From positions 1-64,000 of the IMG/VR virus record IMGVR_UViG_3300013116_000108: a DNA stretch of 64,000 bases; one strand, given 5' to 3'. Below, piece after piece: positions 3,001 through 54,410 of this stretch (position 1 is its first letter; each line of letters opens with the position of its first letter). The translations under genes and the position numbers were made by a program. The notes beneath the pieces are model-generated. The model did not search any database and was not told the DNA's origin. It saw nothing but the letters and a program-made list of their open reading frames with translations.

Positions 3001-3909
3001 GATTCAAGTTATGATGGATACAATGTAGGACTTGATGGACACGGTAGATTAGATATGGATGCCGCGACACAGCCAATTGGTGCTGTTGGTATTCCAACAG
3101 ATGGTAGAACAGATGGTGCCACTACTAGTACAACTGGCTACACAGCAGGCGGTAATAGTTTACCTAGTTCACTAAGTTCATTGATAGTAGAAACTACAGA
3201 AATGGGATTTAACAGAGATTGGTTAATACCACTTGCTAATGCTCATGTACCAATAGACACAGCATTTCATTCATTTACAAACTATGCTGGTTTAACAGGA
3301 TATGGTAATAGCGACTTTGCTGTACACTTAAAAGAAAATAGTACAGATAGTATTGCTGTAACACTAGATGGAACTACATTTGGTTACATGAAAGAGGATG
3401 GACAATACTTAGGAAGATACTTTAATGGTATGTTTGATATTGGTGAAACACAAACTGCTTTCTTACAAACAGGTAGAGTTTGGGAAACATCAGCAACTAA
3501 CAGACTATCTGCTAATATAAATTTAGGTTATACAACTGTTGACACAGTTAATGGATCACTTATTAATAGTAGTGACGACTTAATGAGTTATGGTTGGAAA
3601 CTACAAAATGATACAGTACTTAACGATAAGTGGAGTATGTCAAGTTATATTAGTCAACCAGTTAATGTATTTTCAGGTAACATGAATATACATGCTCCGA
3701 CTAGTAGAGGTGGAAATGAACTAAGTTCTAACCAAGTAAGTTATACAGATACAGAATGGAGCCAAACTGCTAAAACTGAAACTGATATCGGAATAGGATT
3801 TAACTATACCGAAGGAGACTTTAGTTGGAGCATAAGCACAGTATCAAGGTTTGATACTGCTGTTGGCAATGATCACAATGTTACCGCTTCATTTAAGTGG
3901 GTATTTTAG
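43..3909 (+). CDS. Lipoprotein S8 (subtilisin-like) serine protease with N-terminal tandem repeats and C-terminal autotransporter-like beta-barrel
   Basis: Lipobox LLTAC then a poly-Gly linker; catalytic triad motifs GIIDTG, HGSHVAGT, GTSMAAP; C-terminus of alternating beta strands ending in Phe (VTASFKWVF). Confidence 0.85.
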   Translation: MLSKSIKGILISSLIFLLTACGGGGGGGSITLNTPTNPDTPIDTSFGNTATSSINAINNGLQVLNNSTGMELSAIRQIKDKDNLKTVLDSFKAIGTLKSTWDGFDAETKTALNSLFTVTFTFKEGGASKTVNMGTAINIAHGMYTRYYEGHETFWNDAVNTGQFDDTDSSYTSIKNNVETDWNKSSEDLLDEFDNGSTKNVVVNTTETVRVIVETNATRTSSTEATETETVGTVTNTYKVTTTVTTTYSSYRDDTVNYTRTDVVTTYTNGKVETTTGTTTEASRTQGTVVEHDVTTSESVSRELIETVDSAEININTFGNNIIQQVKIVDNALSILKQTGNMVSAMVSIEQSDYVSALAGFKEIATLKETFDGLSNADKLTLQSMTVTITYGNGSSETTNLVDAIAIADGMYNRYYKGHETFWENGATNGQVDDSSSDFTSLSEKVTADASKSKDDLIATYNGTYEEPEEETVTLVSTTSNVVNTQETVRVIISTNATEIITSQSTSTEVTGTITKTYRDTYEVTRTYSSYRDDTVSYTRTDIVKTYSDGTTTTTTGTTSEVARTQGNIVEHGVTDSEPVRVNRELISTVDSAETGTVNEAHLGTKTTGLSDDADSFLTGETRGYCGNWQGCTVDNLTVWTETDIANGTGTSYQHIDASGINDAWAKGWTGKGVNIGIIDTGVNIDHDELDGQIGGVYNNSSTDWNGHGSHVAGTIVAKHDGQGTVGVAFDSKLFVVRTPSLSYLDHNYWNYFKENDVDVVNLSINGRWDQNVSFDDSYVVGSDPNNQNNTYQSLSLIDADKNLYKWNKTIFKNGGYVNLDQVIAQDDNGNLVYGGMDSINALASNMANSDIILVNSAGNNQKIAMAPGWYATATNDDGSLMLDGRLIIVGSYDPASGTNNSHSANAGSICWDVVNDVCQDEYHVSDFFIRAPESMTSLDNSGSKYVNMNGTSMAAPVVTGSIALLRQMWPHMTGSNTVQLILQTADSSYDGYNVGLDGHGRLDMDAATQPIGAVGIPTDGRTDGATTSTTGYTAGGNSLPSSLSSLIVETTEMGFNRDWLIPLANAHVPIDTAFHSFTNYAGLTGYGNSDFAVHLKENSTDSIAVTLDGTTFGYMKEDGQYLGRYFNGMFDIGETQTAFLQTGRVWETSATNRLSANINLGYTTVDTVNGSLINSSDDLMSYGWKLQNDTVLNDKWSMSSYISQPVNVFSGNMNIHAPTSRGGNELSSNQVSYTDTEWSQTAKTETDIGIGFNYTEGDFSWSISTVSRFDTAVGNDHNVTASFKWVF
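175..1824 (+). repeat. Two diverged tandem copies (~270-280 aa each) inside the S8 protein
   Basis: Both copies contain GMY.RYY.GHETFW, VVNT.ETVRVI..TNAT, TYSSYRDDTV.YTRTD and end in REL..TVDSAE; approx 175-978 and 991-1824. Confidence 0.9.
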
Positions 3910-17752: not shown

Positions 17753-18485
17753 ATTAATATTTGTTAGTTTTGAAAAAGGATGCGGTGGTCACAGTATTGC
17801 TAGAACACTATGTTCGTTGCCAAATGTATATTGGTACAGTAATAAGAATAATGGCATACATCCTTGGAATGTTGCTAGTGCTAAAACTAGTGATATTAGA
17901 CAACGAAAAGTTGCTCCAAAACACTTTGATCGAGAAATGGAAAATGGCGATAGATTGCCTCCTATGTACGATTATGTACAAGACTATATTAATGATATTG
18001 ACTGGTATTTAAGAGCCATCTTTTATCCTGCCATCAAAAAAGCACAGCGACAGACGTCTAAAATGCTTGTTTTTCCGACTCATTTAACCACTTTTCAGTT
18101 AAGGCAGTACTTTGGTACTAGTGCCTGCTTAAACGTGTTATACGACCCCTTAAAAGCGTCTAAACGGTACATTACTACTGTTAGTAAGTTCCCTGCTTAT
18201 GTTAAATTTAACGGTATAATACCTAAAGATAACGAGTATTTAAAATGGTTAGAATCCATACATACCATAAAACCAAAGTTTACAGTAGCAGATGTTTGGG
18301 CTATGAAAAAGCATAATAAACTGTATGATAAACGTTTTGAAGAAGAATATTACAACGAAATACAAACCCAAATGAACGACCGATTAATAGTTCGCGAAGG
18401 TGCTCAAAGGGATAGTACTGTTTGTACTATTCATCAAGATAAAATTGATTGGAAAAAAGTTAAGACTTATTTAAATTCGTTGTAG
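17721..18485 (+). CDS. Hypothetical protein, P-loop/sulfotransferase-like N-terminus
   Basis: FVSFEKGCGGHSIARTL; similar start in ORF 52251-53000. Confidence 0.45.
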   Translation: MGSFIILDESKLIFVSFEKGCGGHSIARTLCSLPNVYWYSNKNNGIHPWNVASAKTSDIRQRKVAPKHFDREMENGDRLPPMYDYVQDYINDIDWYLRAIFYPAIKKAQRQTSKMLVFPTHLTTFQLRQYFGTSACLNVLYDPLKASKRYITTVSKFPAYVKFNGIIPKDNEYLKWLESIHTIKPKFTVADVWAMKKHNKLYDKRFEEEYYNEIQTQMNDRLIVREGAQRDSTVCTIHQDKIDWKKVKTYLNSL

Positions 18486-19477
18486 AATTTAATACTAGCA
18501 AGATTCTTCATTTTGCTTTCACACATAATATCAAAATCTTCAGTAAATGTCCAAGCCCATTCGTTAACAGGCTTGTTCCAGTAGTAATCAGAATGGCCAC
18601 GTAACTTGCCTTTCTTGTAACCACTTTCTAGTAGTTTAGTATAATCGGGTCTTACGTCGATCGGATGATCTACAATATAGTTTTCACGACTAACGCTGTA
18701 ATGACAAGCAGGACGGACACCCCGCCAACTATCAATAACACGTCTAATCCTGTCGTCGGTTGGTTCAATATACTCTCCGGCACTATGAACCCAGTGGTGG
18801 TGTATGTCGACAACTAATGCTACCTCCTTTTCAAGTTCGAGTGAGGCATCGAGGCCCCAACTGTTTTCGTCGTTTTCAATAGTAAGTGTGTTTCGTGCTT
18901 CTGTAGACAATCTTGGAAGGACGGCTTTGATACCGGCTGGACCTTGTCTGCCCGAGATGTGGACGTTACATTTGAAGTCTTGCCAGTTTTTACCGTAACC
19001 CATGTACCTGATGAGATCCGCATGATATTCAAACTCCTCTATACTTCTATTTACTATATCTTCATTGTCGCTGGCTAGTACTGTAAACTGACCAGGGTGC
19101 ATTGATAATCTAATGTTATGGCTACGAGCTAAGTCACCTACCTTAATAAGATGTTGTTGACAATAAGCAATTACATCTGGCTTCTGCCAAAAGTAAGACC
19201 ATTCAGGATGTGTATATACAGGAAGACAATCTGATCCTAAACGTACCATTTGTAGTTCAGTTGGAAGTGTACTCACATATTGTACAAGATTGTAATAAGA
19301 CTGAATATTATGTACCATAATATCCCATAATCGTTCTTCAGCAACATCACGTGTTTGCTTATTGAGCCATTGTACTGTAGTAGATCTAGTATTCAACGGA
19401 CGTTGAATATCTTCTAGTAGTTTTTTCTTTTGTGTTTGATCTGGGTGTAAGTATTTACAAGCGAAACCTATCTTCAT
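18467..19477 (-). CDS. uvsE: UV-damage endonuclease (UvdE/UvsE)
   Basis: KIGFACK, RLGSD, RLSMHPGQF, NVHISG, TIENDE, VDIHHHW, H.S.SR, HSDY, MCESKMKN. Confidence 0.93.
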   Translation of the reverse strand: MKIGFACKYLHPDQTQKKKLLEDIQRPLNTRSTTVQWLNKQTRDVAEERLWDIMVHNIQSYYNLVQYVSTLPTELQMVRLGSDCLPVYTHPEWSYFWQKPDVIAYCQQHLIKVGDLARSHNIRLSMHPGQFTVLASDNEDIVNRSIEEFEYHADLIRYMGYGKNWQDFKCNVHISGRQGPAGIKAVLPRLSTEARNTLTIENDENSWGLDASLELEKEVALVVDIHHHWVHSAGEYIEPTDDRIRRVIDSWRGVRPACHYSVSRENYIVDHPIDVRPDYTKLLESGYKKGKLRGHSDYYWNKPVNEWAWTFTEDFDIMCESKMKNLASIKFYNEFK

Positions 19478-22737: not shown

Positions 22738-22813
22738 TGGTGGAGGATACCAGGATCGAACTGGTGACCTCCTGAATGCAAATCAGGCGCTCTCCCATCT
22801 GAGCTAATCCCCC
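22738..22813 (-). tRNA. tRNA-Ala(UGC), CCA encoded
   Basis: 76 nt cloverleaf; acceptor GGGGGAT/ATCCTCC with G3:U70; anticodon arm CCTGA-TTTGCAT-TCAGG; GTTCGAT T-loop. Confidence 0.97.
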
Positions 22814-23423: not shown

Positions 23424-23499
23424 TGGTGCCGGCACACGGACTCGAACCGCGGACCTACTGATTACAAATCAGTTGCTCTACCAACTGAGCTATGCCGGC
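23424..23499 (-). tRNA. tRNA-Thr(UGU), CCA encoded
   Basis: 76 nt; acceptor GCCGGCA/TGCCGGC; anticodon arm ACTGA-TTTGTAA-TCAGT; GTTCGAG T-loop. Confidence 0.97.
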
Positions 23500-28872: not shown

Positions 28873-29022
28873 ATGAGTAAAGACGACCAACGTGCTTGGA
28901 ATATGTTTAAAATATCAAACGGTGGACAATTATGGACCAGTTGTGATTTATGTAAAACGTTTTGTCTTGGCTTAATTGCTGGACTTTGTATAACTTTTAT
29001 ACTTGTTGCTATTATTTTGTAG
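28873..29022 (+). CDS. 49-aa Cys-containing membrane peptide
   Basis: AAGGGA RBS; CDLC and C-terminal TM helix. Confidence 0.5.
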   Translation: MSKDDQRAWNMFKISNGGQLWTSCDLCKTFCLGLIAGLCITFILVAIIL

Positions 29023-31111
29023 TAGCAACATACACACCATCCCATTCTTTAGGTGGAGGATTTTTCTTAAATTCTTCAATCCTATCTGTGATGATTTCGT
29101 AATAACTATCTAGAGAACCACTAAACTGCCCCTTAAGATTATCAATACAATCTTTACAATGTTTCCAATCTTGTTTACGATAACTTTTTCTCAATTCTAT
29201 ATGTAGTTTAACAAATTGCATTACAGTTGGTAAGTCATGTATTCCAACAACATCAGGATCTAATACTGTGTAAATAGCAACCGGTTCTGTTTTGCCTTTT
29301 ACAGCAATTTGATCTAGTTCTAAAATTGTATGTTTATCAGATAAACTCCTTGCTGTTTCTTCGCCAAATAATATTTTCACACCATATCCTTTCGTTTGTC
29401 CTTCTAACCTAGCGGCTAAATTAACAGCATCACCTAAACAACTGTAATCAAATCTTTGATCTGATCCCATATTTCCAACTACGGCATCACCTGTATTAAG
29501 TCCAATGCCTATGTTAATTGGTAGTTTATTTTCTGCCGTTAACTGAGTATTTAACTCCTCTAATCCCTTTAACATCAATAAACTGGTATCAACTGCCTTG
29601 TCAGCCTGTTCGTCAACATCTAAAGGAGCGTTCCAAAATGCCATAATACAATCGCCCATGTATTTGTCGACCGTACCTTCTTTTTCCATAATAATATTTG
29701 TCATAGGTGTTAAGAACCTGTTAACTAATTCTGTTAAACCTTGTGGATTAGTTTTGAATTGTTCTGATATAGGAGTGAACCCTCTAATATCGCAAAACAG
29801 CAATGTAAGTTTTCTAGTATCTCCACCTAGTTTTAATAAGTCTGGATCTTTTTGTAATTTCTTAACCATGCTCGGTGCTAGGTAATGTTCAAACTGCTTT
29901 TTGATTTGTTGCTTTAATCTAAACTCTTTTACAAATCTATTAAACACAGCATGGAAGCCAACAATTAATAACATTAATGCCGGCATTGTAGGATCTATTA
30001 ACCATAACTTAGATTGGAACAAATATGTCACGCCATATACTATGCCATTTAAACTAGCAATAATAACAACACCACTAAACCAATAAGGAGCAAAGGCTAC
30101 AATAATAACAAGTAACATGCCCATAGCAATAATGCCACCTAGTTCATATAAATCCGCCCACATAGGACGTTCAACAGTTTCGCCTAATATAATTGTGCTT
30201 AGTGTACTGCCTATAATTTCATGTGGATATTTTTCACCTATAGGTGTACCAACTGGATTGCCTAATCCTTCTGCTGTTAATCCTATAATAACTGTTTTAC
30301 CTTCAATACTTTGTAAACTATCTACAGTATAATCTAATGTAGGAATGTCAGCATTCCAACGTAAAAATAATCTACCCCTGTCATCAGTTTTAATAATTCC
30401 TCTGTTAACAGGAAAACCTTTTACTCTAACACTATCTATTCCATAAGGCGTAGTTTTCATTTGATAACTGTCTACGCCCATCATTACTCTTAGTGTTTCT
30501 ACTGCTATATTAGGATATAAATCTCCTTGTACATTTATAAGCAAAGGAACACGTCTTACAACGCCATCTACCTCTGGTGCTGTAGTTATTACACCTACAC
30601 CATCAACAACGTCTGCTAGTTCTTTTAGAGGCCCTAGCATACCTGAATATGTAAACAAGTTATTAGCCGCATCTTTGTTACCGCCAACCATACTAACACC
30701 ACGTGGTATACCTGTTGTGCTTTTTTGTATGCTACCTGTTTGTGCTATAACTACACCATTCTGGTATAGTGTTTCCATAAATTCCTGATCTTTGAGAAAT
30801 CTATCTGCTTCACTAAACAGTACAGGTAATACAATAACGCCTGCTCCGTTTTCGCGAAGTTCCCAAATAAGATTGGAAATTAAATCTCTTGGCCAAGGCC
30901 ATTGGCCATTTGTTTCGATACTTGCTTCCCCCAATGTTACATAAACAAGATTATTATCTACATAAGGTTCTTCTTTTTGTAATTGATAATCAAAACTTTT
31001 TAATTTTGCTGTTTGTACTACCCAAGGATTTAAGAATACTATATAAGCAATAGCAAATACAGTTAAAAAAGGTATACTCCAATGTGTTAGAATTCTACTT
31101 AACTTCGACAT
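29012..31111 (-). CDS. CHASE2-domain class III adenylate cyclase
   Basis: N-terminal TM, CHASE2 (GQWPWPR, DGVVRRVPLL), 3 TM helices, FCDIRGFT, DKYMGD (ATP-specifying Lys), FDYSCLGDAVNLAARLE. Confidence 0.92.
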   Translation of the reverse strand: MSKLSRILTHWSIPFLTVFAIAYIVFLNPWVVQTAKLKSFDYQLQKEEPYVDNNLVYVTLGEASIETNGQWPWPRDLISNLIWELRENGAGVIVLPVLFSEADRFLKDQEFMETLYQNGVVIAQTGSIQKSTTGIPRGVSMVGGNKDAANNLFTYSGMLGPLKELADVVDGVGVITTAPEVDGVVRRVPLLINVQGDLYPNIAVETLRVMMGVDSYQMKTTPYGIDSVRVKGFPVNRGIIKTDDRGRLFLRWNADIPTLDYTVDSLQSIEGKTVIIGLTAEGLGNPVGTPIGEKYPHEIIGSTLSTIILGETVERPMWADLYELGGIIAMGMLLVIIVAFAPYWFSGVVIIASLNGIVYGVTYLFQSKLWLIDPTMPALMLLIVGFHAVFNRFVKEFRLKQQIKKQFEHYLAPSMVKKLQKDPDLLKLGGDTRKLTLLFCDIRGFTPISEQFKTNPQGLTELVNRFLTPMTNIIMEKEGTVDKYMGDCIMAFWNAPLDVDEQADKAVDTSLLMLKGLEELNTQLTAENKLPINIGIGLNTGDAVVGNMGSDQRFDYSCLGDAVNLAARLEGQTKGYGVKILFGEETARSLSDKHTILELDQIAVKGKTEPVAIYTVLDPDVVGIHDLPTVMQFVKLHIELRKSYRKQDWKHCKDCIDNLKGQFSGSLDSYYEIITDRIEEFKKNPPPKEWDGVYVATTK

Positions 31112-31307
31112 CTGGTTTCCATTGTAATTTTTCTCTTGTTTCTAATTGAGATTTAAATTTATCTGTAACATTTGGGTTATCACAGGCAGATACAAACATC
31201 TTAATTGCTACATATCCATCACCTTTAAATTTAAGCACATTATTTTCGTAGAAAGTTGCTTTGCTTTCCTGTAAATCTAAAGAATATTTTTTATATCTAT
31301 ATATCAC
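31095..31307 (-). CDS. Hypothetical protein
   Basis: Preceded by TAAATA motif. Confidence 0.55.
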   Translation of the reverse strand: MIYRYKKYSLDLQESKATFYENNVLKFKGDGYVAIKMFVSACDNPNVTDKFKSQLETREKLQWKPDVEVK

Positions 31308-31318
31308 GTTAGTATTTA

Positions 31319-32767
31319 CTAATTTTGTGTCACACTAGTTGAGCATCCGGAACTGTTTGTACAATCTTGTGTAAGTGTATAATTTTGGTTTGTACTGCTG
31401 TTTTGGTCTAATGTTACAGTACTTGCTCCTCCCGAATTTGTTACACTTATCCTAGCACCGTGATCGCCTGAGCCTTGCTGTGTTGTTGTAATAGTATGGC
31501 TATTACCGTTAACATCAATATCTAAATAATGGTTTCCTGTATTTTTTTGGTCTAATGTTAATGTATTACTTGAGCCGTCTAGGTCAATAAACAGAACTTT
31601 ATCGGAGTTATTTCGTTGATGTGCTGTAATTGTATTAGAACTTCCTAACACGTCTATATCTCCGTAATGCCCTGAATCAGTGGCACCATCATTATACTGA
31701 TAAAGTGTTACTGAATTTGTATCACCATCAACTTTTAATTTTGCTCTATGTCCGCCGGTGTCACTACTGCCCATTGTGCCTTGCCTAATCATTACTGTAT
31801 TAGTATTACCATCTACATCTATTCCTATACCATTATTACTTGACGATCCTAAACTGTCGGATCCTTGTTCTAATGTTATGTTTAAATTATCTCCAGTAAG
31901 TGTTCCTCTGCTAGACCAATCTGTTCCTTCGATAAAATTATTGTCGCCTGATTGTACAATATCTAAATCTAAATTTGCTCCACTTTGTGTAATTCTAACA
32001 CTATTTCCTGTAATTGTTCTACTCTGTGCTGTAGTTACAGATGTACTTTGAGAACTTGTAATAGTAACTGTTGATGTTTGACTAAGTATTCCTTCTTCTT
32101 CAAGAGTTTCTTCTACAAAAGTAAACACTCTGGTTTCATTAGTGCCTGTCATGTTGAATTGATCTTGGTCAAATGTAATAATAAGTTTACCACCATTTGA
32201 TCCATAATCATACACCGCCCAAGTTTCCCAGATGCTATTGTTCAATGCCAAGGCTGTGCCTCCACTGTCCATATCAAACACAAGGTCAACACCCCATTGG
32301 TTGCTACTGCCTGTTAGTGAGTATTGTGAGCCTGAGGCATAAGATACATATCCTGAACTACTAGATGTGCCATATATTGTTATTGTACCAACACTTAATT
32401 TTGATTCAACTAACTGCTCGATATTGCCGTTCCTGTTAGTTGCGCCACCATCACCTGCAATGATCACAGTACCACCATTACCGATATAAGTTTCGTATGC
32501 TGTTTTACAAGTACTGCCACAATTTGAGCTACCTGCGATATTGATGTGTAAATCTTTGCCTGTGAAATCACTGAGACTGATTGATCCACTGTTGGTTCCT
32601 GTGACTGTAAACCCCATGTCTTCCAAATGGCCTTTGATGTTGGTGTAGTGATTTGATGTGGCACTGGTATAATTGATATGTGCCGTTTCTGCCCAAACAG
32701 ATTGTGGAATAAAAACTAAAGCAAAAAATAATAAACTAATTACCTTGCTGAACGATTGTAACATCAT
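31319..32767 (-). CDS. Secreted protein with N-terminal globular domain and C-terminal curlin (CsgA/CsgB-like) repeats
   Basis: Signal peptide; repeats of Q.G..N...I...G..N...I.Q. Confidence 0.75.
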   Translation of the reverse strand: MMLQSFSKVISLLFFALVFIPQSVWAETAHINYTSATSNHYTNIKGHLEDMGFTVTGTNSGSISLSDFTGKDLHINIAGSSNCGSTCKTAYETYIGNGGTVIIAGDGGATNRNGNIEQLVESKLSVGTITIYGTSSSSGYVSYASGSQYSLTGSSNQWGVDLVFDMDSGGTALALNNSIWETWAVYDYGSNGGKLIITFDQDQFNMTGTNETRVFTFVEETLEEEGILSQTSTVTITSSQSTSVTTAQSRTITGNSVRITQSGANLDLDIVQSGDNNFIEGTDWSSRGTLTGDNLNITLEQGSDSLGSSSNNGIGIDVDGNTNTVMIRQGTMGSSDTGGHRAKLKVDGDTNSVTLYQYNDGATDSGHYGDIDVLGSSNTITAHQRNNSDKVLFIDLDGSSNTLTLDQKNTGNHYLDIDVNGNSHTITTTQQGSGDHGARISVTNSGGASTVTLDQNSSTNQNYTLTQDCTNSSGCSTSVTQN

Positions 32768-33836
32768 TACCTCCTTGGCCACCTAGTTCATAATTGTATA
32801 TTTCTATATCTCCTTGCTTAACATTTATATTATAGTTGCTATCTCGATTAAGTTCTAAGTCAATAGTGTTATTGCCATCTACTCTCCTACTCCAATTCCA
32901 ACTATCTGCTCTAACAATTAACACAATTCCTCTGTCGTCTACTCCTGATTTTTTCTCTTTCTTCTTGCCACTTAAAGCATCCATACTCAATAGTGCTATT
33001 AATTCTTTGTTAACTTGTTCTAAGATATCTGGTAATAGGTCAAAGTCTAAAAAATTAATATCTAGTTCGTTAAATTCTTCTTCTGTTGCCAATAAGTCAA
33101 CATCTAACTCTTTAAACTCTAAAAAGTCTATATCTAGTATGTTTATGATTTTTACTCGACCTGTCTCGTCTTCATCATCTACTAATTTTTTCTTTCTTAT
33201 TAGTAGCATATTGTTAATTAAATTTTCATCTAATTCTAATTGTACAACTGGAGCCGGTGGACGTTCACGTGAGCTAGTATAAGTTGCCTGAAATGCCTGG
33301 TTGAGAATAACAATACCAACATCGGTCTCAACCTCAATTTCGCCAACGTAACAATATCCTGAAATATCGCAAGAGGGAAGTAATATGATAGTACTGCCCC
33401 CGAGTTCATCCACCGACATAGTAAAGTCAGTACCCCTGACTCCGATTGTTGATGTTGGTGTTTCTATTTTTACGTTTTGCCTAAAGTTTTTTGCCAGTTT
33501 GCCTGAAGCGTATCTTATTGTGCCTAATTTTGCCTGTAAATTCAAAGAGCCTTCATTATTACTTGGATCATATACATAATCATCAATAGTAAGAAGTGAC
33601 TGAGGAGTCATATCTACAATCGTCTCGTCTATGAATGTAAGTCTATGTGCTCCTTGAAATGTTTCAATACGGTCCATCATTTGTAATGGAGTATTTTCTT
33701 GTGTTTCTAGTTTCTCTCCAGATTCTCTTTTTAAAGTACCTGAAGATTCTGCGGCTGTTACTATTCCAATTGAATGATCTTCAGCGTTTACCAGCGTCGG
33801 TAAAACGATCAACAATGTTAATAACAGCCTCAGCAT
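32736..33836 (-). CDS. FecR-domain periplasmic protein
   Basis: Signal peptide; D.I.T, LTFIDET.V.M, G.IRYASG, TPTSTIGVRGTDF. Confidence 0.85.
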   Translation of the reverse strand: MLRLLLTLLIVLPTLVNAEDHSIGIVTAAESSGTLKRESGEKLETQENTPLQMMDRIETFQGAHRLTFIDETIVDMTPQSLLTIDDYVYDPSNNEGSLNLQAKLGTIRYASGKLAKNFRQNVKIETPTSTIGVRGTDFTMSVDELGGSTIILLPSCDISGYCYVGEIEVETDVGIVILNQAFQATYTSSRERPPAPVVQLELDENLINNMLLIRKKKLVDDEDETGRVKIINILDIDFLEFKELDVDLLATEEEFNELDINFLDFDLLPDILEQVNKELIALLSMDALSGKKKEKKSGVDDRGIVLIVRADSWNWSRRVDGNNTIDLELNRDSNYNINVKQGDIEIYNYELGGQGGNDVTIVQQGN

Positions 33837-33843
33837 ATTTCAT

Positions 33844-34536
33844 TTAGTCACTCACTGTAATGTCTACGTCATGACTAGCACCTGATGTAATTGTGCTTAC
33901 ATTAGCATCATTTGTACCACTTACGACAACATCGAAGTTACCCGACGATCCTGTATGTTGCATAGTTACACTATGACCAGCACTATCTCCGTCACCGTCT
34001 ACATCTACGTTAAATGTATTAGTAGATCCTGTTACAGTTAAAGATACTGGAGCACTAGCACCATCAATATCAATATTTGCTGTGTTAGTATCACCTGTAA
34101 TCTGTAAAGTAACATCAGAGTCAGCAGAGTTTCTAATTGTTCCTACATCAATGTCAATGTTGTTACTATCACCTGTTGATCCTGAATCGGTTACGTCAAT
34201 ATCTACATTCCAGTTATCACAGTTATAGTTTCCTGTAGCGTCACAATTTAACACAATGTCGTTTGAGTTACCAGTTACGTCAATATCAACGTTAGCACTA
34301 GCACCTTCTACGTCTGCGTCTAAAATGTTACTATTACCTGTTTGAGTTACACTAAATGCCATACTTGAGCCTATTAACGAAATTCTGTCACTACTAGTAC
34401 CAGCAACGTTATTTGTACCATCTTGGACAATATCTAAGTTTAAGTTATCACCACTTTGTGTAATATAGATATCGTTTGCTTTGGCTCCAGTTAACCCTAA
34501 TGCAACTAAAAATGATATTAATATTATTTTTTTCAT
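33844..34536 (-). CDS. Curlin-like secreted protein
   Basis: Signal peptide; NDIYITQSGDNLNLDIVQDG..N and successive ...G..N repeats. Confidence 0.75.
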   Translation of the reverse strand: MKKIILISFLVALGLTGAKANDIYITQSGDNLNLDIVQDGTNNVAGTSSDRISLIGSSMAFSVTQTGNSNILDADVEGASANVDIDVTGNSNDIVLNCDATGNYNCDNWNVDIDVTDSGSTGDSNNIDIDVGTIRNSADSDVTLQITGDTNTANIDIDGASAPVSLTVTGSTNTFNVDVDGDGDSAGHSVTMQHTGSSGNFDVVVSGTNDANVSTITSGASHDVDITVSD

Positions 34537-35519
34537 AATTTATTTTCCTCAAGGTTGAAGTACGAAGAATGTAAATCGTTACCGTCTTTGATATTATTAG
34601 TTTTATCTTCTTGGTTTTGTTTTTCAACTGCTTCGTCAACTTCTGCCCAAGCCTTTTCTTCTTCGGCTCTGGCATCTGCTTCTTGATCCGATATTGTTTC
34701 TTGTACTTCATTCTGTAAATCTAACCCGTCGTTAGATTTAAACGCCCAAAGTTTTTTTTGATTACCACGTTCAATTAAGTCGCATACTGCTAATTCTATG
34801 GCTAGTCTTACAGCCACGTTTACAGGTTCATTGAGTGCTACTCCTACTTCTCCTTCTACAGGTAATGTACCAGCATCAAACCATCTAAATATATCACCTT
34901 GTGTTTTAGCACCAATGATTGTTTTTGTGGTTGTTGATGTTAGTAATATTTCTCCCGATGAAACTGAAACTAGTCTTATGCTAATTGTTACAGAATCTCT
35001 TGTATATTGAGAATTTGCTCCAATGCCTAATATCCTTGCTCCATTTCCACCACTTTCGAGATTGCTATCGTATCCTACTATTGCGCCTTCAATTATCACT
35101 CCAGCAAATAACAATGGTCTTAATTTTTCTTTGTCTTCGTTTAGTTCCCTGGTTTGCCTAATAATTTGTCGTTCTTTTATAAGGTGATCAATTCCTGCTC
35201 TTTCAACTACTTGAAACCAAGTGCCATTTCCTACTTCCTTTAGTGTTTCTATCAAATAAGCATCGGCTCCTTGGGTTACTGCCGAACTTAAATGTGCTAT
35301 ATTCAATCCAGGTTTTCTTTGACCTGTTTTGTCGGAAAACTGATAAACAGCAACCGTCATTGCGGGTCCATCTAACTCTGGATGATTTTTGACATCTTGA
35401 CTAGCATGTTGTACACCGGCTATATTATACTTGTCAGTATAAAGTTTATTATTCTTAGTCGTTGTAGTACATCCTGTTAAGAAGATTACTAAAATTATAA
35501 TTGATAAAATCTGTTTCAT
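34533..35519 (-). CDS. csgG: Curli secretion channel lipoprotein
   Basis: Lipobox LTGC; VAVYQFSDKTGQRK, SAVTQGA, WFQVVER, KERQIIR, EGAIVGYDSN, NEP. Confidence 0.93.
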   Translation of the reverse strand: MKQILSIIILVIFLTGCTTTTKNNKLYTDKYNIAGVQHASQDVKNHPELDGPAMTVAVYQFSDKTGQRKPGLNIAHLSSAVTQGADAYLIETLKEVGNGTWFQVVERAGIDHLIKERQIIRQTRELNEDKEKLRPLLFAGVIIEGAIVGYDSNLESGGNGARILGIGANSQYTRDSVTISIRLVSVSSGEILLTSTTTKTIIGAKTQGDIFRWFDAGTLPVEGEVGVALNEPVNVAVRLAIELAVCDLIERGNQKKLWAFKSNDGLDLQNEVQETISDQEADARAEEEKAWAEVDEAVEKQNQEDKTNNIKDGNDLHSSYFNLEENKL

Positions 35520-35968
35520 TAGAAAGCAAAGTCTCCTACTGGTACTGACATTGTAGTAACTGTTCCATCGGCTTCTGTAATTCTGATATTAATATTACCG
35601 TTTACTTTTTCCCAGTATACTATGTTGCCTTCTATTTCTGCTGTGCCTGAAGTGGCACTACCTTCTCCAAACATATTATCAACTAACTGCTTGGATAATT
35701 GAGCATATATACGACTTTCAACGTTAACTAAGAATTTTTTAACCGTGTTTTGCGATGATTTTCGTTCTTGCTCTTTTCTTTCTGATTCTTCTTTTTCTTT
35801 TATTTCTTTTTCACGAGAAAAGCGAAGTTGCTCTACAGATAACACATGATTACTGTAGCCATTTCCTGAATGAAAACTAGGATTTTTAAACCCAAACGTT
35901 AAGTCTTGTGCTGTCGCACCAACAGAAATTAAACTACAAATAAATGCTATTGTTATAAGTTGTTTCAT
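35519..35968 (-). CDS. csgF: Curli assembly component
   Basis: Signal peptide; QDLTFGFKNPSF..GNG; ESRIYAQLSKQLV. Confidence 0.85.
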   Translation of the reverse strand: MKQLITIAFICSLISVGATAQDLTFGFKNPSFHSGNGYSNHVLSVEQLRFSREKEIKEKEESERKEQERKSSQNTVKKFLVNVESRIYAQLSKQLVDNMFGEGSATSGTAEIEGNIVYWEKVNGNINIRITEADGTVTTMSVPVGDFAF

Positions 35969-35989: not shown

Positions 35990-36232
35990 TTACTCTGATT
36001 CTTTTTGGGTTAATAGTTGCTTATATTCTTCAGATGATACACAAGCGAAATCATATAGCACAAGTTCTGTGTTGTATGCTTCGTTGACGTGATTGTTTAC
36101 AATCGGATAATTTTCCTGAGCAAAACTAATACAAGCCGTTTCATTTTTAAATGAAAGGCTGTCAAACTTGTAGACTTCATAGTCAGTGCCTTCTTGACTG
36201 ACTATTGCCATCAAAATCCAAAATAATTTCAT
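35990..36232 (-). CDS. Small hypothetical protein
   Basis: Late-type motif upstream; two Cys. Confidence 0.55.
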   Translation of the reverse strand: MKLFWILMAIVSQEGTDYEVYKFDSLSFKNETACISFAQENYPIVNNHVNEAYNTELVLYDFACVSSEEYKQLLTQKESE

Positions 36233-42894: not shown

Positions 42895-43200
42895 CTAGTA
42901 CATTCTCTTTTGAGAAAATCCCCATTGTGCTTCTTGTTCACGTTGTTTCTTTAACCAACGATTACGGCCTGCTTTTTTGGCTAGTCTTTTCTTTTCGCTA
43001 GGTTTTATAAAATACTGCCTATCTCGACATTCTTGTAAAGTATTGTCTGCTTGGAGTTTTTTCTTTAGTTTTCTTAATGCCTTTGTGACATCATTGTTGT
43101 GAACTATAACAGTTGTTCCACCTGTTAAATCTTGAGCTCTTTTAGGTTGATTTCTATTACCAAAGCCTGCTCTGTTATTGCTTTTTCTATTTACAAACAT
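42895..43200 (-). CDS. rpsU: Ribosomal protein bS21
   Basis: V.V.NNDVTKALRKLKKK....E...RQYF.KPSEKKR. Confidence 0.88.
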   Translation of the reverse strand: MFVNRKSNNRAGFGNRNQPKRAQDLTGGTTVIVHNNDVTKALRKLKKKLQADNTLQECRDRQYFIKPSEKKRLAKKAGRNRWLKKQREQEAQWGFSQKRMY

Positions 43201-44363
43201 TAAGCCTCCTGTACGTCTGTGTCATTAATAATTACTTCCTTTCCTTTAAGTTGATCTAACTCGTAATAGTATTCAAGCAAAGTATTTTCTAATATACCTT
43301 TTAATGCTCTAGCACCTACCTTATATTGTAACGCAAGTTCGACTATTTTGTCAAGTGCTTTCTCCGAAAATATCAAACTAACATTATCTAAATCAAAATA
43401 GAACCTAGTTTGCTCAATTAGGTTATTATCAATATCAGCCAATACTTGTTTTAATTCATCTTTGGAAAGTTCTGTTGTTTGAACAACAACTGGAAAGCGA
43501 CCAATAAATTCAGGTATCATTCCAAAGTCAATTAACTCGCTTGAAATTAGTTTACTTTGGCCTCCGTGTGTTTCTCCAAACCCAATAGTATTTGTTTTTT
43601 GGCTGTCCATTCCAACAAATGCTCCACTTCCAATAAACAAAATCTTACTAGTATCTACTTCAATCATTTCTTGCTGTGGATGTTTTCTTCCACCTTGTGG
43701 TGCTACTCTAACAGTTGTACCTTCAACTAATTTTAACAATGCTTGTTGTACACCTTCGCCTGAAACATCTCTAGTAATTGAAACGTTCTCACTTTTCCTG
43801 CCAATTTTATCAATTTCATCTAAAAATACAATACCTTGTTCTGCTCTTGCTACATTGTAATCTACTTTCATTAGCAAAGAACTAATAATACTTTCAACAT
43901 CATCACCAACATACCCACTTTCAGTTAAACTTGTAGCATCAGCAATTACAATAGGCACATCTAAAAACTTAGCAATTTGTTTTGCCATAAAAGTTTTACC
44001 ACTACCAGTAGGACCAATTATTAATTGATTATTCTTTTCAATAGTACCTTTTCTATCATACATTAATCTCTTGTAGTGATTTACTACACCTACTGCCATA
44101 TGACGTTTTGCTTTATGTTGTCCAACTACTGTTTCGTCTAAAAATGCTACAATCTCTTTTGCTGTTTTGGGTTCTAATTCCTTTGCCCATTGCTTTGCCT
44201 TTTCATCTGTGAGGACTTTACTACACAAATCTATACATTCATCACAAATACCAACACCTTCTGCTACAATAATCTTGTATACTTGGTCTTTTGTTTTGCC
44301 ACAAAAATTACACTGACTGACTGAACGAATTTGATCTATACTAGTTGATTTATCATCTGTCAT
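43200..44363 (-). CDS. clpX: ATP-dependent Clp protease ATP-binding subunit ClpX
   Basis: Zinc finger CNFCGK..CDEC, GPTGSGKT, GYVG pore loop, DEIDK, RDVSGEGVQQALLK, RKH loop, IGF loop; start 44363 or 44393. Confidence 0.96.
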   Translation of the reverse strand: MTDDKSTSIDQIRSVSQCNFCGKTKDQVYKIIVAEGVGICDECIDLCSKVLTDEKAKQWAKELEPKTAKEIVAFLDETVVGQHKAKRHMAVGVVNHYKRLMYDRKGTIEKNNQLIIGPTGSGKTFMAKQIAKFLDVPIVIADATSLTESGYVGDDVESIISSLLMKVDYNVARAEQGIVFLDEIDKIGRKSENVSITRDVSGEGVQQALLKLVEGTTVRVAPQGGRKHPQQEMIEVDTSKILFIGSGAFVGMDSQKTNTIGFGETHGGQSKLISSELIDFGMIPEFIGRFPVVVQTTELSKDELKQVLADIDNNLIEQTRFYFDLDNVSLIFSEKALDKIVELALQYKVGARALKGILENTLLEYYYELDQLKGKEVIINDTDVQEA

Positions 44364-44730
44364 TTGAGAGCCTTTTTTGTAATATCCAGTCAACTGGAAC
44401 TGTTAGTTTTCTATTATTTAATGAATCGTAATTCTCTTCATGATGTATATCATCACACCACCAAACGTTTGGCATAGACATCAAGTACCCTGTAACAATT
44501 TTATTTTCATATTCATTGCTTACAATAACTACAGATGATCTAGTTGCTGTATTAACAATCCAATCAACTTTGCTATTTTGTTCGCCTATGTGTAAACTAT
44601 AATCGCCGTATTTAGGTAATTCCTTAATATATTGCTCAACTGTCCAGTTATCACAACCTACAAGGAATACACTTTCTTGTTTACCAAACCAATAATCTGG
44701 TTCTGTTACTACTGTTACATTATTGTCCAA
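44353..44730 (-). CDS. Hypothetical protein
   Basis: Operon-packed. Confidence 0.6.
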   Translation of the reverse strand: MDNNVTVVTEPDYWFGKQESVFLVGCDNWTVEQYIKELPKYGDYSLHIGEQNSKVDWIVNTATRSSVVIVSNEYENKIVTGYLMSMPNVWWCDDIHHEENYDSLNNRKLTVPVDWILQKRLSNDR

Positions 44731-54037: not shown

Positions 54038-54341
54038 CTTCTAGAAGATTTCTGTTGATAGGCATCTTCCAAACCCCGAGCAACTATGCCGCTAAGGCAA
54101 AGTCCTCATGAAACACATTATCGTTTGCGTTTATACGTTTTGTTCGCGTTAACCGAGCTTACATCCGGGCAACTCCACTCTCCTAATAACTACCTGTCGA
54201 TCCTTTTTCAACCCCATCATAAACACATTCATATAATCACACCAAAATCTGTGTTGTTACTTTTGGAATGTGTTTATGGTGGAGTTGCTGGGTACCGCCC
54301 CCAGGTCCAGATTAGCGTTTGAATAACTTCATCGTTACGAC
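54038..54341 (-). ncRNA. ssrA: Circularly permuted two-piece tmRNA; acceptor piece ends CCA at 54277, coding piece starts at 54215; tag ANDNVFHEDFALAA (54128-54084)
   Basis: ...GGCGGTACCCAGCAACTCCACCA precedes GGGGTTGAAAAAGGATCGAC; acceptor GGGGTTG/CAACTCC with G3:U70; 13-bp inverted repeat bounding the intervening segment; outer ends approximate. Confidence 0.93.
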
Positions 54342-54345
54342 ATTA

Positions 54346-54374
54346 TTTATAACATAAAGTAGAAAAAATGTCAA
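54346..54374 (-). promoter_or_regulatory. Composite sigma70 and late promoter for tmRNA
   Basis: TTGACA-N17-TATAAA whose -10 extends to TATAAATA. Confidence 0.8.
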
Positions 54375-54410
54375 GAAAGTGATTTGAAAAAACGAAGGAA
54401 AACATAGGTT

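What the first reader, a model, noticed from the sequence alone, without database searches (positions are those of the whole stretch)
29012..35968. Curli secretion operon fused to a trans-envelope cAMP signalling chain
Seen, co-oriented and tightly packed: csgF, csgG, curlin-like protein, FecR protein, large curlin-repeat protein, small ORF, CHASE2 adenylate cyclase. Known: CsgG/F secrete and anchor curli amyloid; FecR-type periplasmic proteins relay outer-membrane signals; csgF/G have been reported in some marine phages. Inferred: the phage builds an amyloid coat on the infected cell and couples its assembly or contact state via FecR and CHASE2 to cAMP, a surface-sensing circuit that could control aggregation, superinfection exclusion or lysis timing. 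No CsgE, csgD or CRP is in the window.
Basis: partly seen in the sequence, partly recalled or inferred. Interest (0 to 1): 0.85.

Follow-up and report, generated by a model that had tools for sequence, protein, structure and literature searches.

The report
Pelagiphage curli–FecR–CHASE2 cyclase cassette
The gene cluster is real, but it is the already published "viral curli (T8SS) + FecR + adenylate cyclase" module of marine SAR11/OM43 phages; how it works is still unknown, and the idea that it forms an envelope-spanning sensor is plausible but untested.

Summary
Observation confirmed. On the minus strand at 29012-35968 lie csgF, csgG, a 230-aa curlin-repeat protein, a secreted FecR-domain protein, a 487-aa head-plus-curlin-repeat protein, a 70-aa ORF and a CHASE2 class III cyclase with all six catalytic residues.

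The window is an uncultured relative of Pelagibacter phage HTVC008M and Methylophilales phage Melnitz, which carry the same cassette in the same order. In 80 further viral contigs, 69/69 informative loci keep csgF-csgG-curlin-FecR and 33/34 keep the cyclase.

The cassette is already published, FecR and the adenylate cyclase included (PMC7029224, PMC9004378, PMC9599517). The finding is therefore not new.

What I add:
- FecR-domain plus CHASE2 is a widespread bacterial gene pair, usually next to a Slam-like TPR/beta-barrel outer-membrane protein. SAR11 hosts carry their own version with a PP2C output.
- Phage loci lack that barrel and carry CsgG/CsgF and the curlins instead.
- The head of the second curlin protein is swapped between phages (PA14 versus a GIFT/GATase-like fold).
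- Every phage FecR protein ends in a small beta-domain with a conserved terminal strand.

Best reading: an envelope-spanning sensor with cAMP output, confidence about 0.45. No cAMP receptor is known.

The parts
35990..36232 (-). 80-aa ORF just upstream of csgF, with a hydrophobic N-terminus. Membership of the cassette is uncertain.
   Evidence: 67% identical copy in the same position in L004. No Pfam, PHROG or PADLOC hit. Absent as a recognisable homologue from HTVC008M and Melnitz.
35519..35968 (-). csgF: secreted cap/nucleator partner of the CsgG channel.
   Evidence: Pfam CsgF E 3.5e-19. phrog_35372 E 3e-47. N-terminal signal peptide followed by FGFKNPSF. Its start codon lies next to the csgG gene with a 1-nt overlap.
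34533..35519 (-). csgG: outer-membrane lipoprotein secretion channel of the type VIII (curli) system.
   Evidence: Pfam CsgG E 2.3e-49. Full-length match to E. coli CsgG structures (3x2r, 4uv3, 6l7a) at E 5e-45. Lipobox LTGC. The constriction-loop residues differ from E. coli, and there is a window-specific acidic C-terminal tail at residues 262-328.
33844..34536 (-). curA: 230-aa secreted protein made almost wholly of curlin-like repeats. It sits in the CsgA/CsgB position.
   Evidence: Signal peptide and Q-x-G-x-x-N repeats. Curlin_rpt 17.1 bits, below threshold. Orthologues are present in every phage locus. HTVC008M's copy is annotated as curlin-associated/CsgB.
32736..33836 (-). Secreted FecR-domain protein. 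Layout: signal peptide; FecR domain at about 25-200; acidic low-confidence linker at 204-294; small beta-meander C-domain at 298-363, ending in a conserved strand.
   Evidence: Pfam FecR E 2.7e-8. phrog_37870 E 2e-95. Alignments show an invariant Q363 and a G-x-N-x-I-x-I-x-Q tail. AlphaFold model m4860c17409a4. Foldseek matches to PupR CCSSD 6ovk_R and to 5ix9, described as 'cell surface anchoring domain'. More than 3600 metagenomic homologues.
31319..32782 (-). curB: 487-aa secreted protein with an alpha/beta head (about 33-230) and about nine curlin-like repeats (260-486). The start may instead be the ATG at 32764.
   Evidence: Signal peptide. Curlin_rpt 17.6 bits here, 33.1 bits in the HTVC008M orthologue. 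AlphaFold model me0fe63952997, pLDDT 72. The head's best fold matches are the IFT52 N-terminal domain 5fms_A (TMt 0.64, E 1e-4) and class I glutamine-amidotransferase folds. Orthologues carry PA14 heads or no head. The 481-aa database copy P0121 supports the later start.
31095..31307 (-). 70-aa ORF between curB and the cyclase. No signal peptide; function unknown.
   Evidence: 51% identical copy at the same place in L004/L005. No recognisable homologue in the other phage loci compared, L001, L002 and L006-L011. No family hit.
29012..31111 (-). Inner-membrane CHASE2 class III adenylate cyclase. Layout: TM1 7-33; periplasmic CHASE2 34-318; TM2-4 319-394; cyclase domain about 425-620; C-terminal extension to 699.
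   Evidence: Pfam CHASE2 3.4e-36 and Guanylate_cyc 2.1e-20. Best solved relatives are the engineered bacteriophytochrome-adenylate cyclase fusion 6fht (4e-36), P. aeruginosa CyaB 3r5g (9e-36), Cya2 2w01 and CyaC 1wc0. D441, K483, D487, S557, N564 and R568 are all present. Hydropathy gives the topology. phrog_35576 E 2e-205.

Best explanation
The cassette is one functional unit that a SAR11/OM43-type myophage installs in the envelope of the infected cell.

Shown:
- All five extracytoplasmic proteins carry Sec signals. CsgG is a lipoprotein channel with its CsgF partner.
- Two proteins are curlin-type beta-solenoid repeat proteins. One is repeats only; the other has an exchangeable globular head.
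- The cyclase has the topology and all catalytic residues of an active, ATP-specific class III enzyme with a periplasmic CHASE2 sensor.
- Gene order is conserved down to 34% identity.
- FecR-domain plus CHASE2 is a bacterial gene pair that normally sits beside an outer-membrane TPR/beta-barrel (Slam-like) protein. In phages that position is taken by CsgG/CsgF and the curlins.

Inferred:
- CsgG/CsgF export CurA and CurB, which assemble into a surface fibre displaying the CurB head.
- The soluble periplasmic FecR-domain protein couples the state of the channel or fibre to the CHASE2 domain. Its C-terminal beta-domain would dock at the channel or on curlin subunits, and its FecR domain would contact CHASE2.
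- The cyclase converts this signal into cAMP inside the infected cell.

The downstream target and the physiological pay-off are not known. Candidates are aggregation sensing, detection of lysis products or of superinfection, lysis timing, and metabolic reprogramming.
For: - Domain calls and signal peptides.
- Catalytic residues D441/K483/D487/S557/N564/R568, and the 1+3 transmembrane topology.
- Synteny: identical order in HTVC008M and Melnitz and in the IMG/VR loci L004-L011. In 80 more IMG/VR loci, 69/69 keep the upstream part and 33/34 keep the cyclase.
- The bacterial module: 32/74 FecR-selected loci have a CHASE2 gene within 10 kb (median gap about 430 bp; 27 of the 32 also match my cyclase-domain model). 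40/74 have a Slam-like TPR-barrel gene, mostly directly adjacent, and 17 have both. None of the 17 phage-type loci has one.
- The host lineage has its own CHASE2-PP2C / barrel / FecR operon.
- Literature: FecR-CHASE2 pairing in Burkholderia, Campylobacterota and S. meliloti (PMC5192318, PMC9239204, PMC5498481). An outer-membrane barrel, NsrA, is required for signalling to CHASE2 cyclases (PMC7529298, PMC13001267).
- Fold evidence: the FecR domain resembles the PupR cell-surface-signalling domain, and the C-domain resembles a 'cell surface anchoring domain'.
Against: - No physical interaction was or could be tested here.
- No cAMP receptor (CRP, cNMP-binding, GAF) or phosphodiesterase is encoded in the window. 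I could not establish that SAR11 has one.
- S. meliloti's FecR-domain neighbour of cyaD1 (SMc02177) was not needed for plant-signal perception (PMC5498481).
- According to PMC9599517, podovirus versions often lack the second curlin gene and the cyclase and carry a histidine kinase instead. The cyclase is therefore dispensable for whatever CsgGF, curlin and FecR do.
- The CsgG constriction residues differ from E. coli, so curlin export is not assured.
- The curlin repeats in this window are below Pfam's threshold.
- The Foldseek match of the small C-domain is weak (E 7.6e-3, 62 columns), and the FecR model has a mean pLDDT of only 64.
Confidence: 0.45

Rival explanations
1. Adhesive-fibre module with merely co-inherited regulators. 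CsgG/F export curlin fibres that clump cells ('sibling capture') or shield the infected cell from other phages. FecR and the cyclase act independently, for example in iron or general regulation. This is the reading proposed in PMC7029224 and PMC9599517.
For: - A complete minimal T8SS plus two curlin-repeat proteins is present.
- CurB heads are of kinds I recall being linked to sugar binding (PA14, GIFT-like), which fits an adhesin.
- Some podovirus cassettes lack the cyclase (PMC9599517).
Against: - FecR is wedged between the two curlin genes, and the order is invariant.
- The protein lacks everything that makes FecR an iron regulator: anti-sigma domain, FecI and FecA.
- FecR-domain plus CHASE2 is a conserved pair in its own right.
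- No clumping was seen in Melnitz infections (PMC9004378).
Confidence: 0.2
2. FecR is a secretion adaptor or plug that replaces the missing CsgE. It binds curlin subunits through its C-terminal beta-meander and caps the periplasmic mouth of CsgG. The CHASE2 cyclase then reports secretion load or channel occupancy rather than an outside signal.
For: - CsgE is absent.
- The FecR C-domain is a small beta-meander whose last strand, G-x-N-x-I-x-I-x-Q, looks like half a curlin repeat and is conserved in all phage copies.
- Its best fold match is described as a 'cell surface anchoring domain'.
- In bacteria the FecR gene abuts another outer-membrane translocon type, the Slam-like barrel.
Against: - The similarity to curlin repeats is a short motif only. 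Curlin HMMs do not hit the FecR proteins, and the reverse is also true.
- The fold match is weak.
- There is no evidence that Slam-like partners secrete FecR proteins. The T11SS cargo survey I searched contains no occurrence of 'FecR', 'CHASE2' or 'cyclase'.
Confidence: 0.15
3. Lysis-timing pore. CsgG, with or without CsgF, is repurposed as a gated outer-membrane pore, pinholin- or secretin-like, as proposed for Melnitz in PMC9004378. FecR and CHASE2-cyclase would provide the trigger.
For: - The constriction loop of CsgG differs from E. coli: Y to G, N to H, F to L, plus one extra residue.
- T4-type phages time lysis from periplasmic signals (general knowledge).
Against: - Two conserved curlin-repeat cargo genes with signal peptides would be unnecessary for a mere pore.
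- An outer-membrane pore does not depolarise the inner membrane.
- No holin linkage was seen near the cassette.
Confidence: 0.1
4. The curlin-like proteins, or the whole set, are virion or otherwise unrelated structural components, and the gene adjacency is an accident of a hypervariable region.
For: - The cassette lies between the replication and structural modules, next to baseplate and tape-measure genes in HTVC008M and Melnitz.
- Beta-solenoid repeats also occur in tail fibres.
Against: - All five extracytoplasmic proteins have Sec signal peptides or a lipobox.
- CsgG and CsgF are bona fide outer-membrane secretion proteins.
- Order is conserved across 34-100% identity and, according to PMC9599517, across two phage families.
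Confidence: 0.03

Closest known systems
Viral T8SS (curli) module of pelagiphages: HTVC008M-type myophages, Melnitz and HTVC023P-type podophages (PMC7029224, PMC9004378, PMC9599517)
   Same: Same genes in the same order (csgF, csgG, curlin repeat, FecR, curlin repeat, adenylate cyclase) at 42-50% protein identity to the cultured phages. Same genomic position next to the baseplate/tape-measure block.
   Different: This copy comes from an uncultured 204-kb IMG/VR contig. It has two extra small ORFs (80 aa and 70 aa), a CsgG with an acidic C-terminal tail, and a CurB head that is not PA14. There is no histidine kinase of the kind reported upstream in the podovirus version.
Escherichia/Salmonella curli system (csgBAC-csgDEFG)
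   Same: CsgG lipoprotein channel (E 5e-45 to the solved structures), CsgF, and secreted Q/N/G-rich strand-turn-strand repeat subunits.
   Different: No CsgE, CsgC/H or CsgD. The CsgG constriction residues are not conserved. The subunits are much longer, and one carries a globular head. A FecR-domain protein and a cyclase lie inside the operon.
Bacterial FecR-domain + CHASE2 receptor modules: Burkholderia BiofilmReg LysM-FecR + CHASE2 kinase; the Campylobacterota CHASE2 cyclase cluster; S. meliloti cyaD1-smc02177; NsrA to CyaK/CyaD
   Same: A secreted FecR-domain protein is encoded beside a CHASE2 receptor of the same membrane topology, with an outer-membrane component in the same locus. The cyclase output matches that of most alphaproteobacterial examples found here.
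   Different: The bacterial loci carry a Slam-like TPR + beta-barrel protein, or LysM, and never CsgG/CsgF among the 74 loci examined. The phage FecR has its own C-terminal beta-domain and acidic linker.
FecIRA cell-surface signalling (anti-sigma FecR/PupR)
   Same: The periplasmic FecR domain fold (Pfam FecR; Foldseek match to PupR CCSSD 6ovk_R).
   Different: No cytoplasmic anti-sigma domain, no membrane anchor, no ECF sigma factor and no TonB-dependent transducer. It is not an iron regulator.

Membership tests
Type VIII (curli) secretion system | CsgG outer-membrane lipoprotein channel | tested here: met
   Pfam CsgG 2.3e-49. Full-length alignment to E. coli CsgG structures at 5e-45. Lipobox LTGC.
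Type VIII (curli) secretion system | CsgG constriction residues as in E. coli (Tyr51/Asn55/Phe56; numbering recalled from the literature) | tested here: not met
   The alignment puts Gly, His and Leu at these positions, with a one-residue insertion in the loop.
Type VIII (curli) secretion system | CsgF accessory protein | tested here: met
   Pfam CsgF 3.5e-19, covering 5-132 of 132 profile positions. No PDB sequence hit by phmmer.
Type VIII (curli) secretion system | Secreted curlin-repeat subunit(s) | tested here: inconclusive
   The window proteins score 17.1 and 17.6 bits against a 20.7 cut-off. Eight of 14 orthologues hit at E<=0.01, with the HTVC008M CurB at 33.1 bits. AlphaFold predicts a strand-turn-strand solenoid. 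Amyloid formation is untested.
Type VIII (curli) secretion system | CsgE periplasmic adaptor, CsgC/H chaperone, CsgD regulator | tested here: not met
   None of these families appears in any window ORF scanned. PMC9599517 reports the same absence.
FecIRA cell-surface signalling | Periplasmic FecR domain | tested here: met
   Pfam FecR 2.7e-8, 34.6 bits against a 24 cut-off. Foldseek match to PupR CCSSD 6ovk_R over 153 columns.
FecIRA cell-surface signalling | N-terminal cytoplasmic anti-sigma domain plus one transmembrane helix | tested here: not met
   The FecR domain starts about residue 25, directly after a cleavable-looking signal peptide. The only hydrophobic segment is residues 1-19.
FecIRA cell-surface signalling | Partner ECF sigma factor (FecI) and TonB-dependent transducer (FecA) | tested here: not met
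   No sigma-70 r2/r4 or TonB-receptor family in the window ORFs scanned.
CHASE2 class III adenylate cyclase | Periplasmic CHASE2 domain between TM1 and a three-helix bundle, followed by a cytoplasmic cyclase domain | tested here: met
   Pfam CHASE2 3.4e-36 (residues 19-334) and Guanylate_cyc 2.1e-20 (433-610). Hydropathy segments at 7-33 and 319-394.
CHASE2 class III adenylate cyclase | Two metal Asp, substrate Lys + Ser/Thr/Asp, transition-state Asn and Arg | tested here: met
   D441, D487, K483, S557, N564 and R568 are present, by alignment to CyaB 3r5g and Cya2 2w01. Lys instead of Glu argues for ATP. In Melnitz and L008 the Asn column reads Ser.
CHASE2 class III adenylate cyclase | cAMP synthesis regulated through CHASE2 | not testable with these tools
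   Needs an enzyme assay or complementation of a cya mutant.
Bacterial Slam-like barrel / FecR-domain / CHASE2 triad | FecR-domain gene next to a CHASE2 receptor gene | tested here: met
   In the window the two genes are separated only by curB and a 70-aa ORF. Among bacterial loci, 32/74 have the pair, with a median gap of about 430 bp.
Bacterial Slam-like barrel / FecR-domain / CHASE2 triad | TPR + beta-barrel (SlipAM/DUF2860-like) outer-membrane protein in the locus | tested here: not met
   Present in 40/74 bacterial loci and in none of the 17 phage-type loci L001-L017. None was detected in the 80 extra viral loci either.
Pycsar anti-phage system | PycC cyclase plus adjacent cNMP-binding effector | tested here: not met
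   The cyclase domain hits PycC models (2e-29) through the shared fold. No effector is nearby and no other PADLOC hit was found. The purine-type Lys483 is present.

The most novel reading that the evidence does not exclude
FecR-domain proteins are the missing periplasmic co-receptors of CHASE2 sensor domains, whose ligands have never been identified. In this reading they always work tethered to an outer-membrane translocon: a Slam-like TPR-barrel in bacteria, including the SAR11 host's own CHASE2-PP2C operon, and CsgG/CsgF with a curlin fibre in phages.

The phage would then have swapped in its own antenna, a surface amyloid with exchangeable lectin-like heads. It would use that antenna to sense events outside the infected cell, such as contact, lysate from neighbours or superinfection. 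It would answer with cAMP, possibly feeding the host's GAF-PP2C partner-switching pathway.
Probability: 0.2. Interest if true: 0.75.

Novelty: already known. Interest (0 to 1): 0.4.

Why it matters
These phages infect the most abundant heterotrophic bacteria in the ocean. According to PMC9599517, the module is found at every ocean virome station surveyed, is expressed there, and makes up about 0.1% of assembled viral proteins. It gives the host an envelope structure it does not otherwise have. Its function remains unknown despite three papers.

The useful angle from this re-examination is that the cassette may be a natural experiment on CHASE2 signalling. CHASE2 is a widespread sensor domain with no known ligand. 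A phage has kept the FecR-CHASE2 pair while replacing the usual outer-membrane partner. That makes the pairing directly testable in laboratory E. coli.

Tried and rejected
- **Promoter and terminator scans.** The T4 late-promoter motif TATAAATA occurs twice in the window against about 11 expected. Sigma-70-like sites and terminators are at shuffle level. Nothing can be said about expression timing.
- **FecR-domain tree.** The phage clade is monophyletic, but its sister group is unresolved.
- **CHASE2-domain tree.** The phage clade groups with SAR11 CHASE2-PP2C. Support is only UFBoot 72 / SH-aLRT 96, and the SAR11 rows have deviant amino-acid composition. I treat host origin as a lead, not a result.
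- **FecR C-terminus as a true curlin repeat.** My curlin HMMs do not hit FecR proteins, and the reverse is also true. Only a short motif resemblance remains.
- **Combined CsgG + FecR + CHASE2 locus in real bacteria.** The only genome-collection hits with csgG/csgF (L012, L015, L017) lie on MAG contigs of 11-104 kb with full-length phage-like FecR (34-46% identity), which I take for mis-binned phage. L015 has phage-like small ORFs. L013 and L014, which show curlin and FecR genes only, look the same.
- **cAMP receptor.** None is encoded in the window. A literature search for SAR11 cAMP signalling was uninformative.
- **Pycsar or another defence system.** Rejected; only fold-level similarity of the cyclase was found.
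- **The NsrA paper (PMC5952392).** Not held, so I could not check whether NsrA belongs to the Slam-like family.

Full report
**What is there.**

Seven co-oriented ORFs lie on the minus strand between 35968 and 29012. They overlap by 1-47 nt or are separated by 7-11 nt. Pfam identifies them as follows:

| ORF | Coordinates | Pfam result |
|---|---|---|
| CsgF | 35519-35968 | E 3.5e-19 |
| CsgG | 34533-35519 | E 2.3e-49 |
| 230-aa repeat protein (CurA) | 33844-34536 | Curlin_rpt 17.1 bits, below the 20.7 cut-off |
| FecR-domain protein | 32736-33836 | E 2.7e-8 |
| 487-aa protein (CurB) | 31319-32782 | Curlin_rpt 17.6 bits, below the cut-off |
| 70-aa ORF | 31095-31307 | no hit |
| 699-aa cyclase | 29012-31111 | CHASE2 3.4e-36 + Guanylate_cyc 2.1e-20 |

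- CsgG aligns over its whole length with the solved E. coli CsgG (E 5e-45) and has a lipobox (LTGC).
- CsgF, CurA, FecR and CurB all begin with signal peptides.
- Hydropathy gives the cyclase the usual CHASE2 topology: TM1 at 7-33, a periplasmic domain, then three helices at 319-394.
- All six class III catalytic residues are present: D441, K483, D487, S557, N564 and R568. The Lys is the residue that specifies ATP.

**Are the 'curlin-like' proteins curlins?**

In this window they fall just below Pfam's threshold. Three other results support the assignment:
- Eight of the 14 orthologues I collected hit Curlin_rpt. The HTVC008M CurB scores 33.1 bits and the L008 CurB 24.3 bits.
- Many metagenomic relatives of CurB carry a precomputed PF07012 (Curlin_rpt) label.
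- AlphaFold (20-sequence alignment, pLDDT 72) models residues 260-486 of CurB as about nine strand-turn-strand repeats.

I accept them as curlin-type beta-solenoid repeat proteins. Whether they form amyloid is untested.

**Where the window comes from.**

The window is identical to part of IMG/VR contig UViG_3300013116_000108, which is 204 kb long. Its other genes are phage and auxiliary genes typical of pelagimyophages:
- ribonucleotide reductase and DnaB
- ClpX/ClpP/ClpS and Hsp20
- ribosomal protein S21
- a permuted alpha-type tmRNA and two tRNAs

The only deposited phages with DNA or protein similarity to the cassette are Pelagibacter phage HTVC008M and the four Methylophilales phage Melnitz isolates. 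Both carry the same genes in the same order and are already annotated as such.

**Conservation.**

In the first IMG/VR loci the order csgF-csgG-curA-fecR-curB-cyclase holds down to 34% FecR identity. A profile-based scan returned at least 586 viral hits, of which I examined the best 80:
- All 69 loci with enough upstream sequence have csgF > csgG > curlin > FecR.
- 33 of 34 loci with enough downstream sequence have the CHASE2 cyclase.

**Prior knowledge.**

- Zaragoza-Solas et al. 2020 (PMC7029224) described the 'curli operon' of pelagimyophages and proposed 'sibling capture'.
- Buchholz et al. 2022 (PMC9004378) found the operon in Melnitz, saw no clumping, and proposed a gated pore that controls lysis.
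- A 2022 mSystems paper (PMC9599517) reported that the viral T8SS cluster contains FecR, a histidine kinase and an adenylate cyclase. It re-found curlin repeats, FecR and the cyclase in the myophages. It showed the module at all 65 GOV2.0 stations and in metatranscriptomes, and argued for transfer between phage families.

That paper's main text never mentions CHASE2 or PA14, and it reads FecR as an iron regulator.

**What FecR and CHASE2 are doing together.**

The phage protein is not a FecR anti-sigma factor. It has no cytoplasmic domain and no membrane anchor, and the window has no FecI or FecA.

I scanned one genome per bacterial species with a FecR profile. The top full-length hits (L012-L017) sit on MAG contigs of 11-104 kb that look like mis-binned phage; L012, L015 and L017 also show csgF and csgG. 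Among the remaining 74 bacterial loci, matched on the FecR domain only:
- 32 have a CHASE2 gene within 10 kb, with a median gap of about 430 bp. 27 of these also match my cyclase-domain model.
- 40 have, usually directly adjacent, a 450-500-aa secreted protein with N-terminal TPR repeats, a C-terminal barrel that hits SlipAM/DUF2860, and a terminal aromatic residue. This is a Slam-like outer-membrane protein.
- 17 have all three genes.
- None has csgG or csgF.

No phage-type locus has the Slam-like gene.

Pelagibacteraceae single-cell genomes carry their own version: CHASE2-SpoIIE (a PP2C phosphatase), a DUF2860-like barrel, a 190-aa FecR protein and a 344-aa unknown. A GAF-SpoIIE gene lies next to them on the opposite strand.

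The pairing has been noted piecemeal in the literature:
- Burkholderia LysM-FecR + CHASE2 kinase (PMC5192318).
- Campylobacterota CHASE2 cyclase + FecR + TPR protein + phosphodiesterase (PMC9239204).
- S. meliloti smc02177, described as a FecR-domain protein (PMC5498481). That it lies next to cyaD1 is my recollection from the locus-tag numbering.

In S. meliloti an outer-membrane barrel, NsrA, is required for CHASE2 cyclases to respond to an external protein signal (PMC7529298, PMC13001267).

An envelope-spanning relay ending in a CHASE2 cyclase therefore has experimental precedent. The phage cassette looks like that bacterial module with CsgG/CsgF and the curlins in place of the usual barrel.

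**Extra anatomy.**

- *FecR protein.* The AlphaFold model has mean pLDDT 64. The FecR domain scores about 80, the linker at 204-294 scores below 50, and the C-domain at 298-363 scores about 75. The FecR domain matches the PupR cell-surface signalling domain. The small C-terminal beta-meander's best match is a 76-residue 'cell surface anchoring domain', 5ix9 (TMt 0.74, E 7.6e-3). I recall 5ix9 as the retention domain of a giant RTX adhesin. This is a weak but suggestive match.
- *FecR C-terminus.* Every phage FecR ends in G-x-N-x-I-x-I-x-Q, with the Gln invariant. This resembles half a curlin repeat, but profile searches do not link the two families.
- *CurB head.* The head differs between phages. 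It is a PA14 domain in HTVC008M and L007 (27.7 and 43.9 bits), it is absent in L006, and it is an alpha/beta domain here. The fold here is closest to the IFT52 N-terminal (GIFT) domain and to class I amidotransferases. One metagenomic relative is 86% identical over the repeat half but carries a PA14 head (P0154). Head swapping on a conserved fibre stalk is what one expects of a surface-exposed binding element.
- *CsgG constriction.* The three constriction residues of E. coli CsgG are replaced by Gly, His and Leu, and the loop is one residue longer.

**Origin of the sensor.**

In a CHASE2-domain tree the phage sequences form one clade whose sister is the SAR11 CHASE2-PP2C group. Support is only UFBoot 72 / SH-aLRT 96, the SAR11 rows have deviant composition, and sampling was driven by FecR similarity. 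The FecR tree is unresolved. A host origin for the sensor domain is a lead only.

**Mechanism I commit to (confidence about 0.45).**

The cassette is one unit:
1. CsgG/CsgF export CurA and CurB, which form a surface fibre displaying the CurB head.
2. The soluble periplasmic FecR protein links the channel or fibre to the CHASE2 domain.
3. The cyclase makes cAMP.

*Shown:* domains, signal peptides, catalytic competence by sequence, conserved order, and the bacterial counterpart of the module.
*Inferred:* every contact, the direction of signalling, and the output.

The weakest point is the output. No cAMP receptor or phosphodiesterase is encoded in the window. I could not establish what the host has. 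The host's GAF-PP2C neighbour is a speculative candidate.

**Rivals.**

| Rival | Confidence |
|---|---|
| Adhesive fibre with independent regulators | 0.2 |
| FecR as a CsgE-like adaptor or plug, with the cyclase sensing secretion load | 0.15 |
| Lysis-timing pore | 0.1 |
| Virion components or accidental adjacency | 0.03 |

The cyclase domain's hits to Pycsar PycC models reflect the shared fold only.

**Verdict.**

The locus is real, is correctly read at the gene level, and is biologically interesting. However, it is a new member of a module published in 2020-2022. The 'trans-envelope cAMP chain' is a reasonable and partly new framing, supported by bacterial gene-neighbourhood evidence and by the S. 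meliloti precedent. None of the functional claims is demonstrated.

Noticed in passing
L044:6629-12898 (Pelagibacteraceae single-cell genome AG-891-N03); similar in L031, L032, L034, L036, L041, L053, L075: SAR11 cells have their own operon: a CHASE2-SpoIIE (PP2C) sensor, a DUF2860/Slam-like barrel, a 190-aa FecR-domain protein and a 344-aa unknown. A GAF-SpoIIE gene lies next to it on the opposite strand. This host counterpart of the phage's FecR-CHASE2 pair is not mentioned in the passages of the three phage papers that my term searches returned.
   Followed up: partly
L018-L091 (bacterial loci from the genome collection): A Slam-like outer-membrane protein (N-terminal TPR, C-terminal SlipAM/DUF2860-type barrel ending in R-W/F-D/E-F) sits directly beside FecR-domain genes in 40 of 74 loci. 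It occurs together with a CHASE2 receptor in 17. This suggests a general barrel / FecR / CHASE2 triad.
   Followed up: partly
window 31319-32782 versus L001:7694-9019, L007:5265-6551, L006:9013-9708 and protein P0154: The N-terminal head of the second curlin-repeat protein is exchanged between phages: PA14, a GIFT/amidotransferase-like alpha/beta fold, or none. The repeat stalk stays conserved, up to 86% identity with a different head.
   Followed up: partly
window 32736-32950 (C-terminal third of the FecR protein) and residues 204-294: All phage FecR proteins end in a conserved G-x-N-x-I-x-I-x-Q strand with an invariant Gln. They also have an acidic linker with repeated LDxDFL-like motifs that AlphaFold cannot place. 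Neither feature is explained.
   Followed up: partly
window 34533-34735 (CsgG residues 262-328): This CsgG carries a 65-residue acidic, low-complexity C-terminal tail. It is absent from the HTVC008M, Melnitz and other phage CsgG proteins, which are 271-301 aa.
   Followed up: no
L008:10149-13926 (IMG/VR UViG_3300024228_000554, 340 kb): A distant phage version of the cassette has five extra ORFs between the second curlin gene and the cyclase. One has a weak cytochrome c-like hit. The contig also encodes an Mtd-type tail fibre N-domain.
   Followed up: no
window 54041-54378 (-), 22738-22813 (-), 23424-23499 (-): A permuted (two-piece) alphaproteobacterial-type tmRNA with tag peptide ANDNVFHEDFALAA, plus tRNA-Ala(TGC) and tRNA-Thr(TGT). 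Melnitz has a similar tmRNA. I did not look for the glutamine riboswitch reported upstream of the Melnitz tmRNA.
   Followed up: no
window 43-3909 (+) and window 18467-51207: There is a 1288-aa protein with a subtilase S8 domain. There is also a set of host-like proteostasis and metabolism genes: ClpX-like 43200-44393, ClpP, ClpS, Hsp20, ribosomal protein S21, an IMPDH/GMP-reductase-family protein, AdoMet decarboxylase, UvdE 18467-19477 and a Dam-type methylase.
   Followed up: no
whole contig (IMGVR_UViG_3300013116_000108): The source contig is 204 kb, clearly longer than HTVC008M (147 kb) and Melnitz (142 kb). I did not check whether this reflects a larger genome, a concatemer or a mis-assembly.
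   Followed up: no
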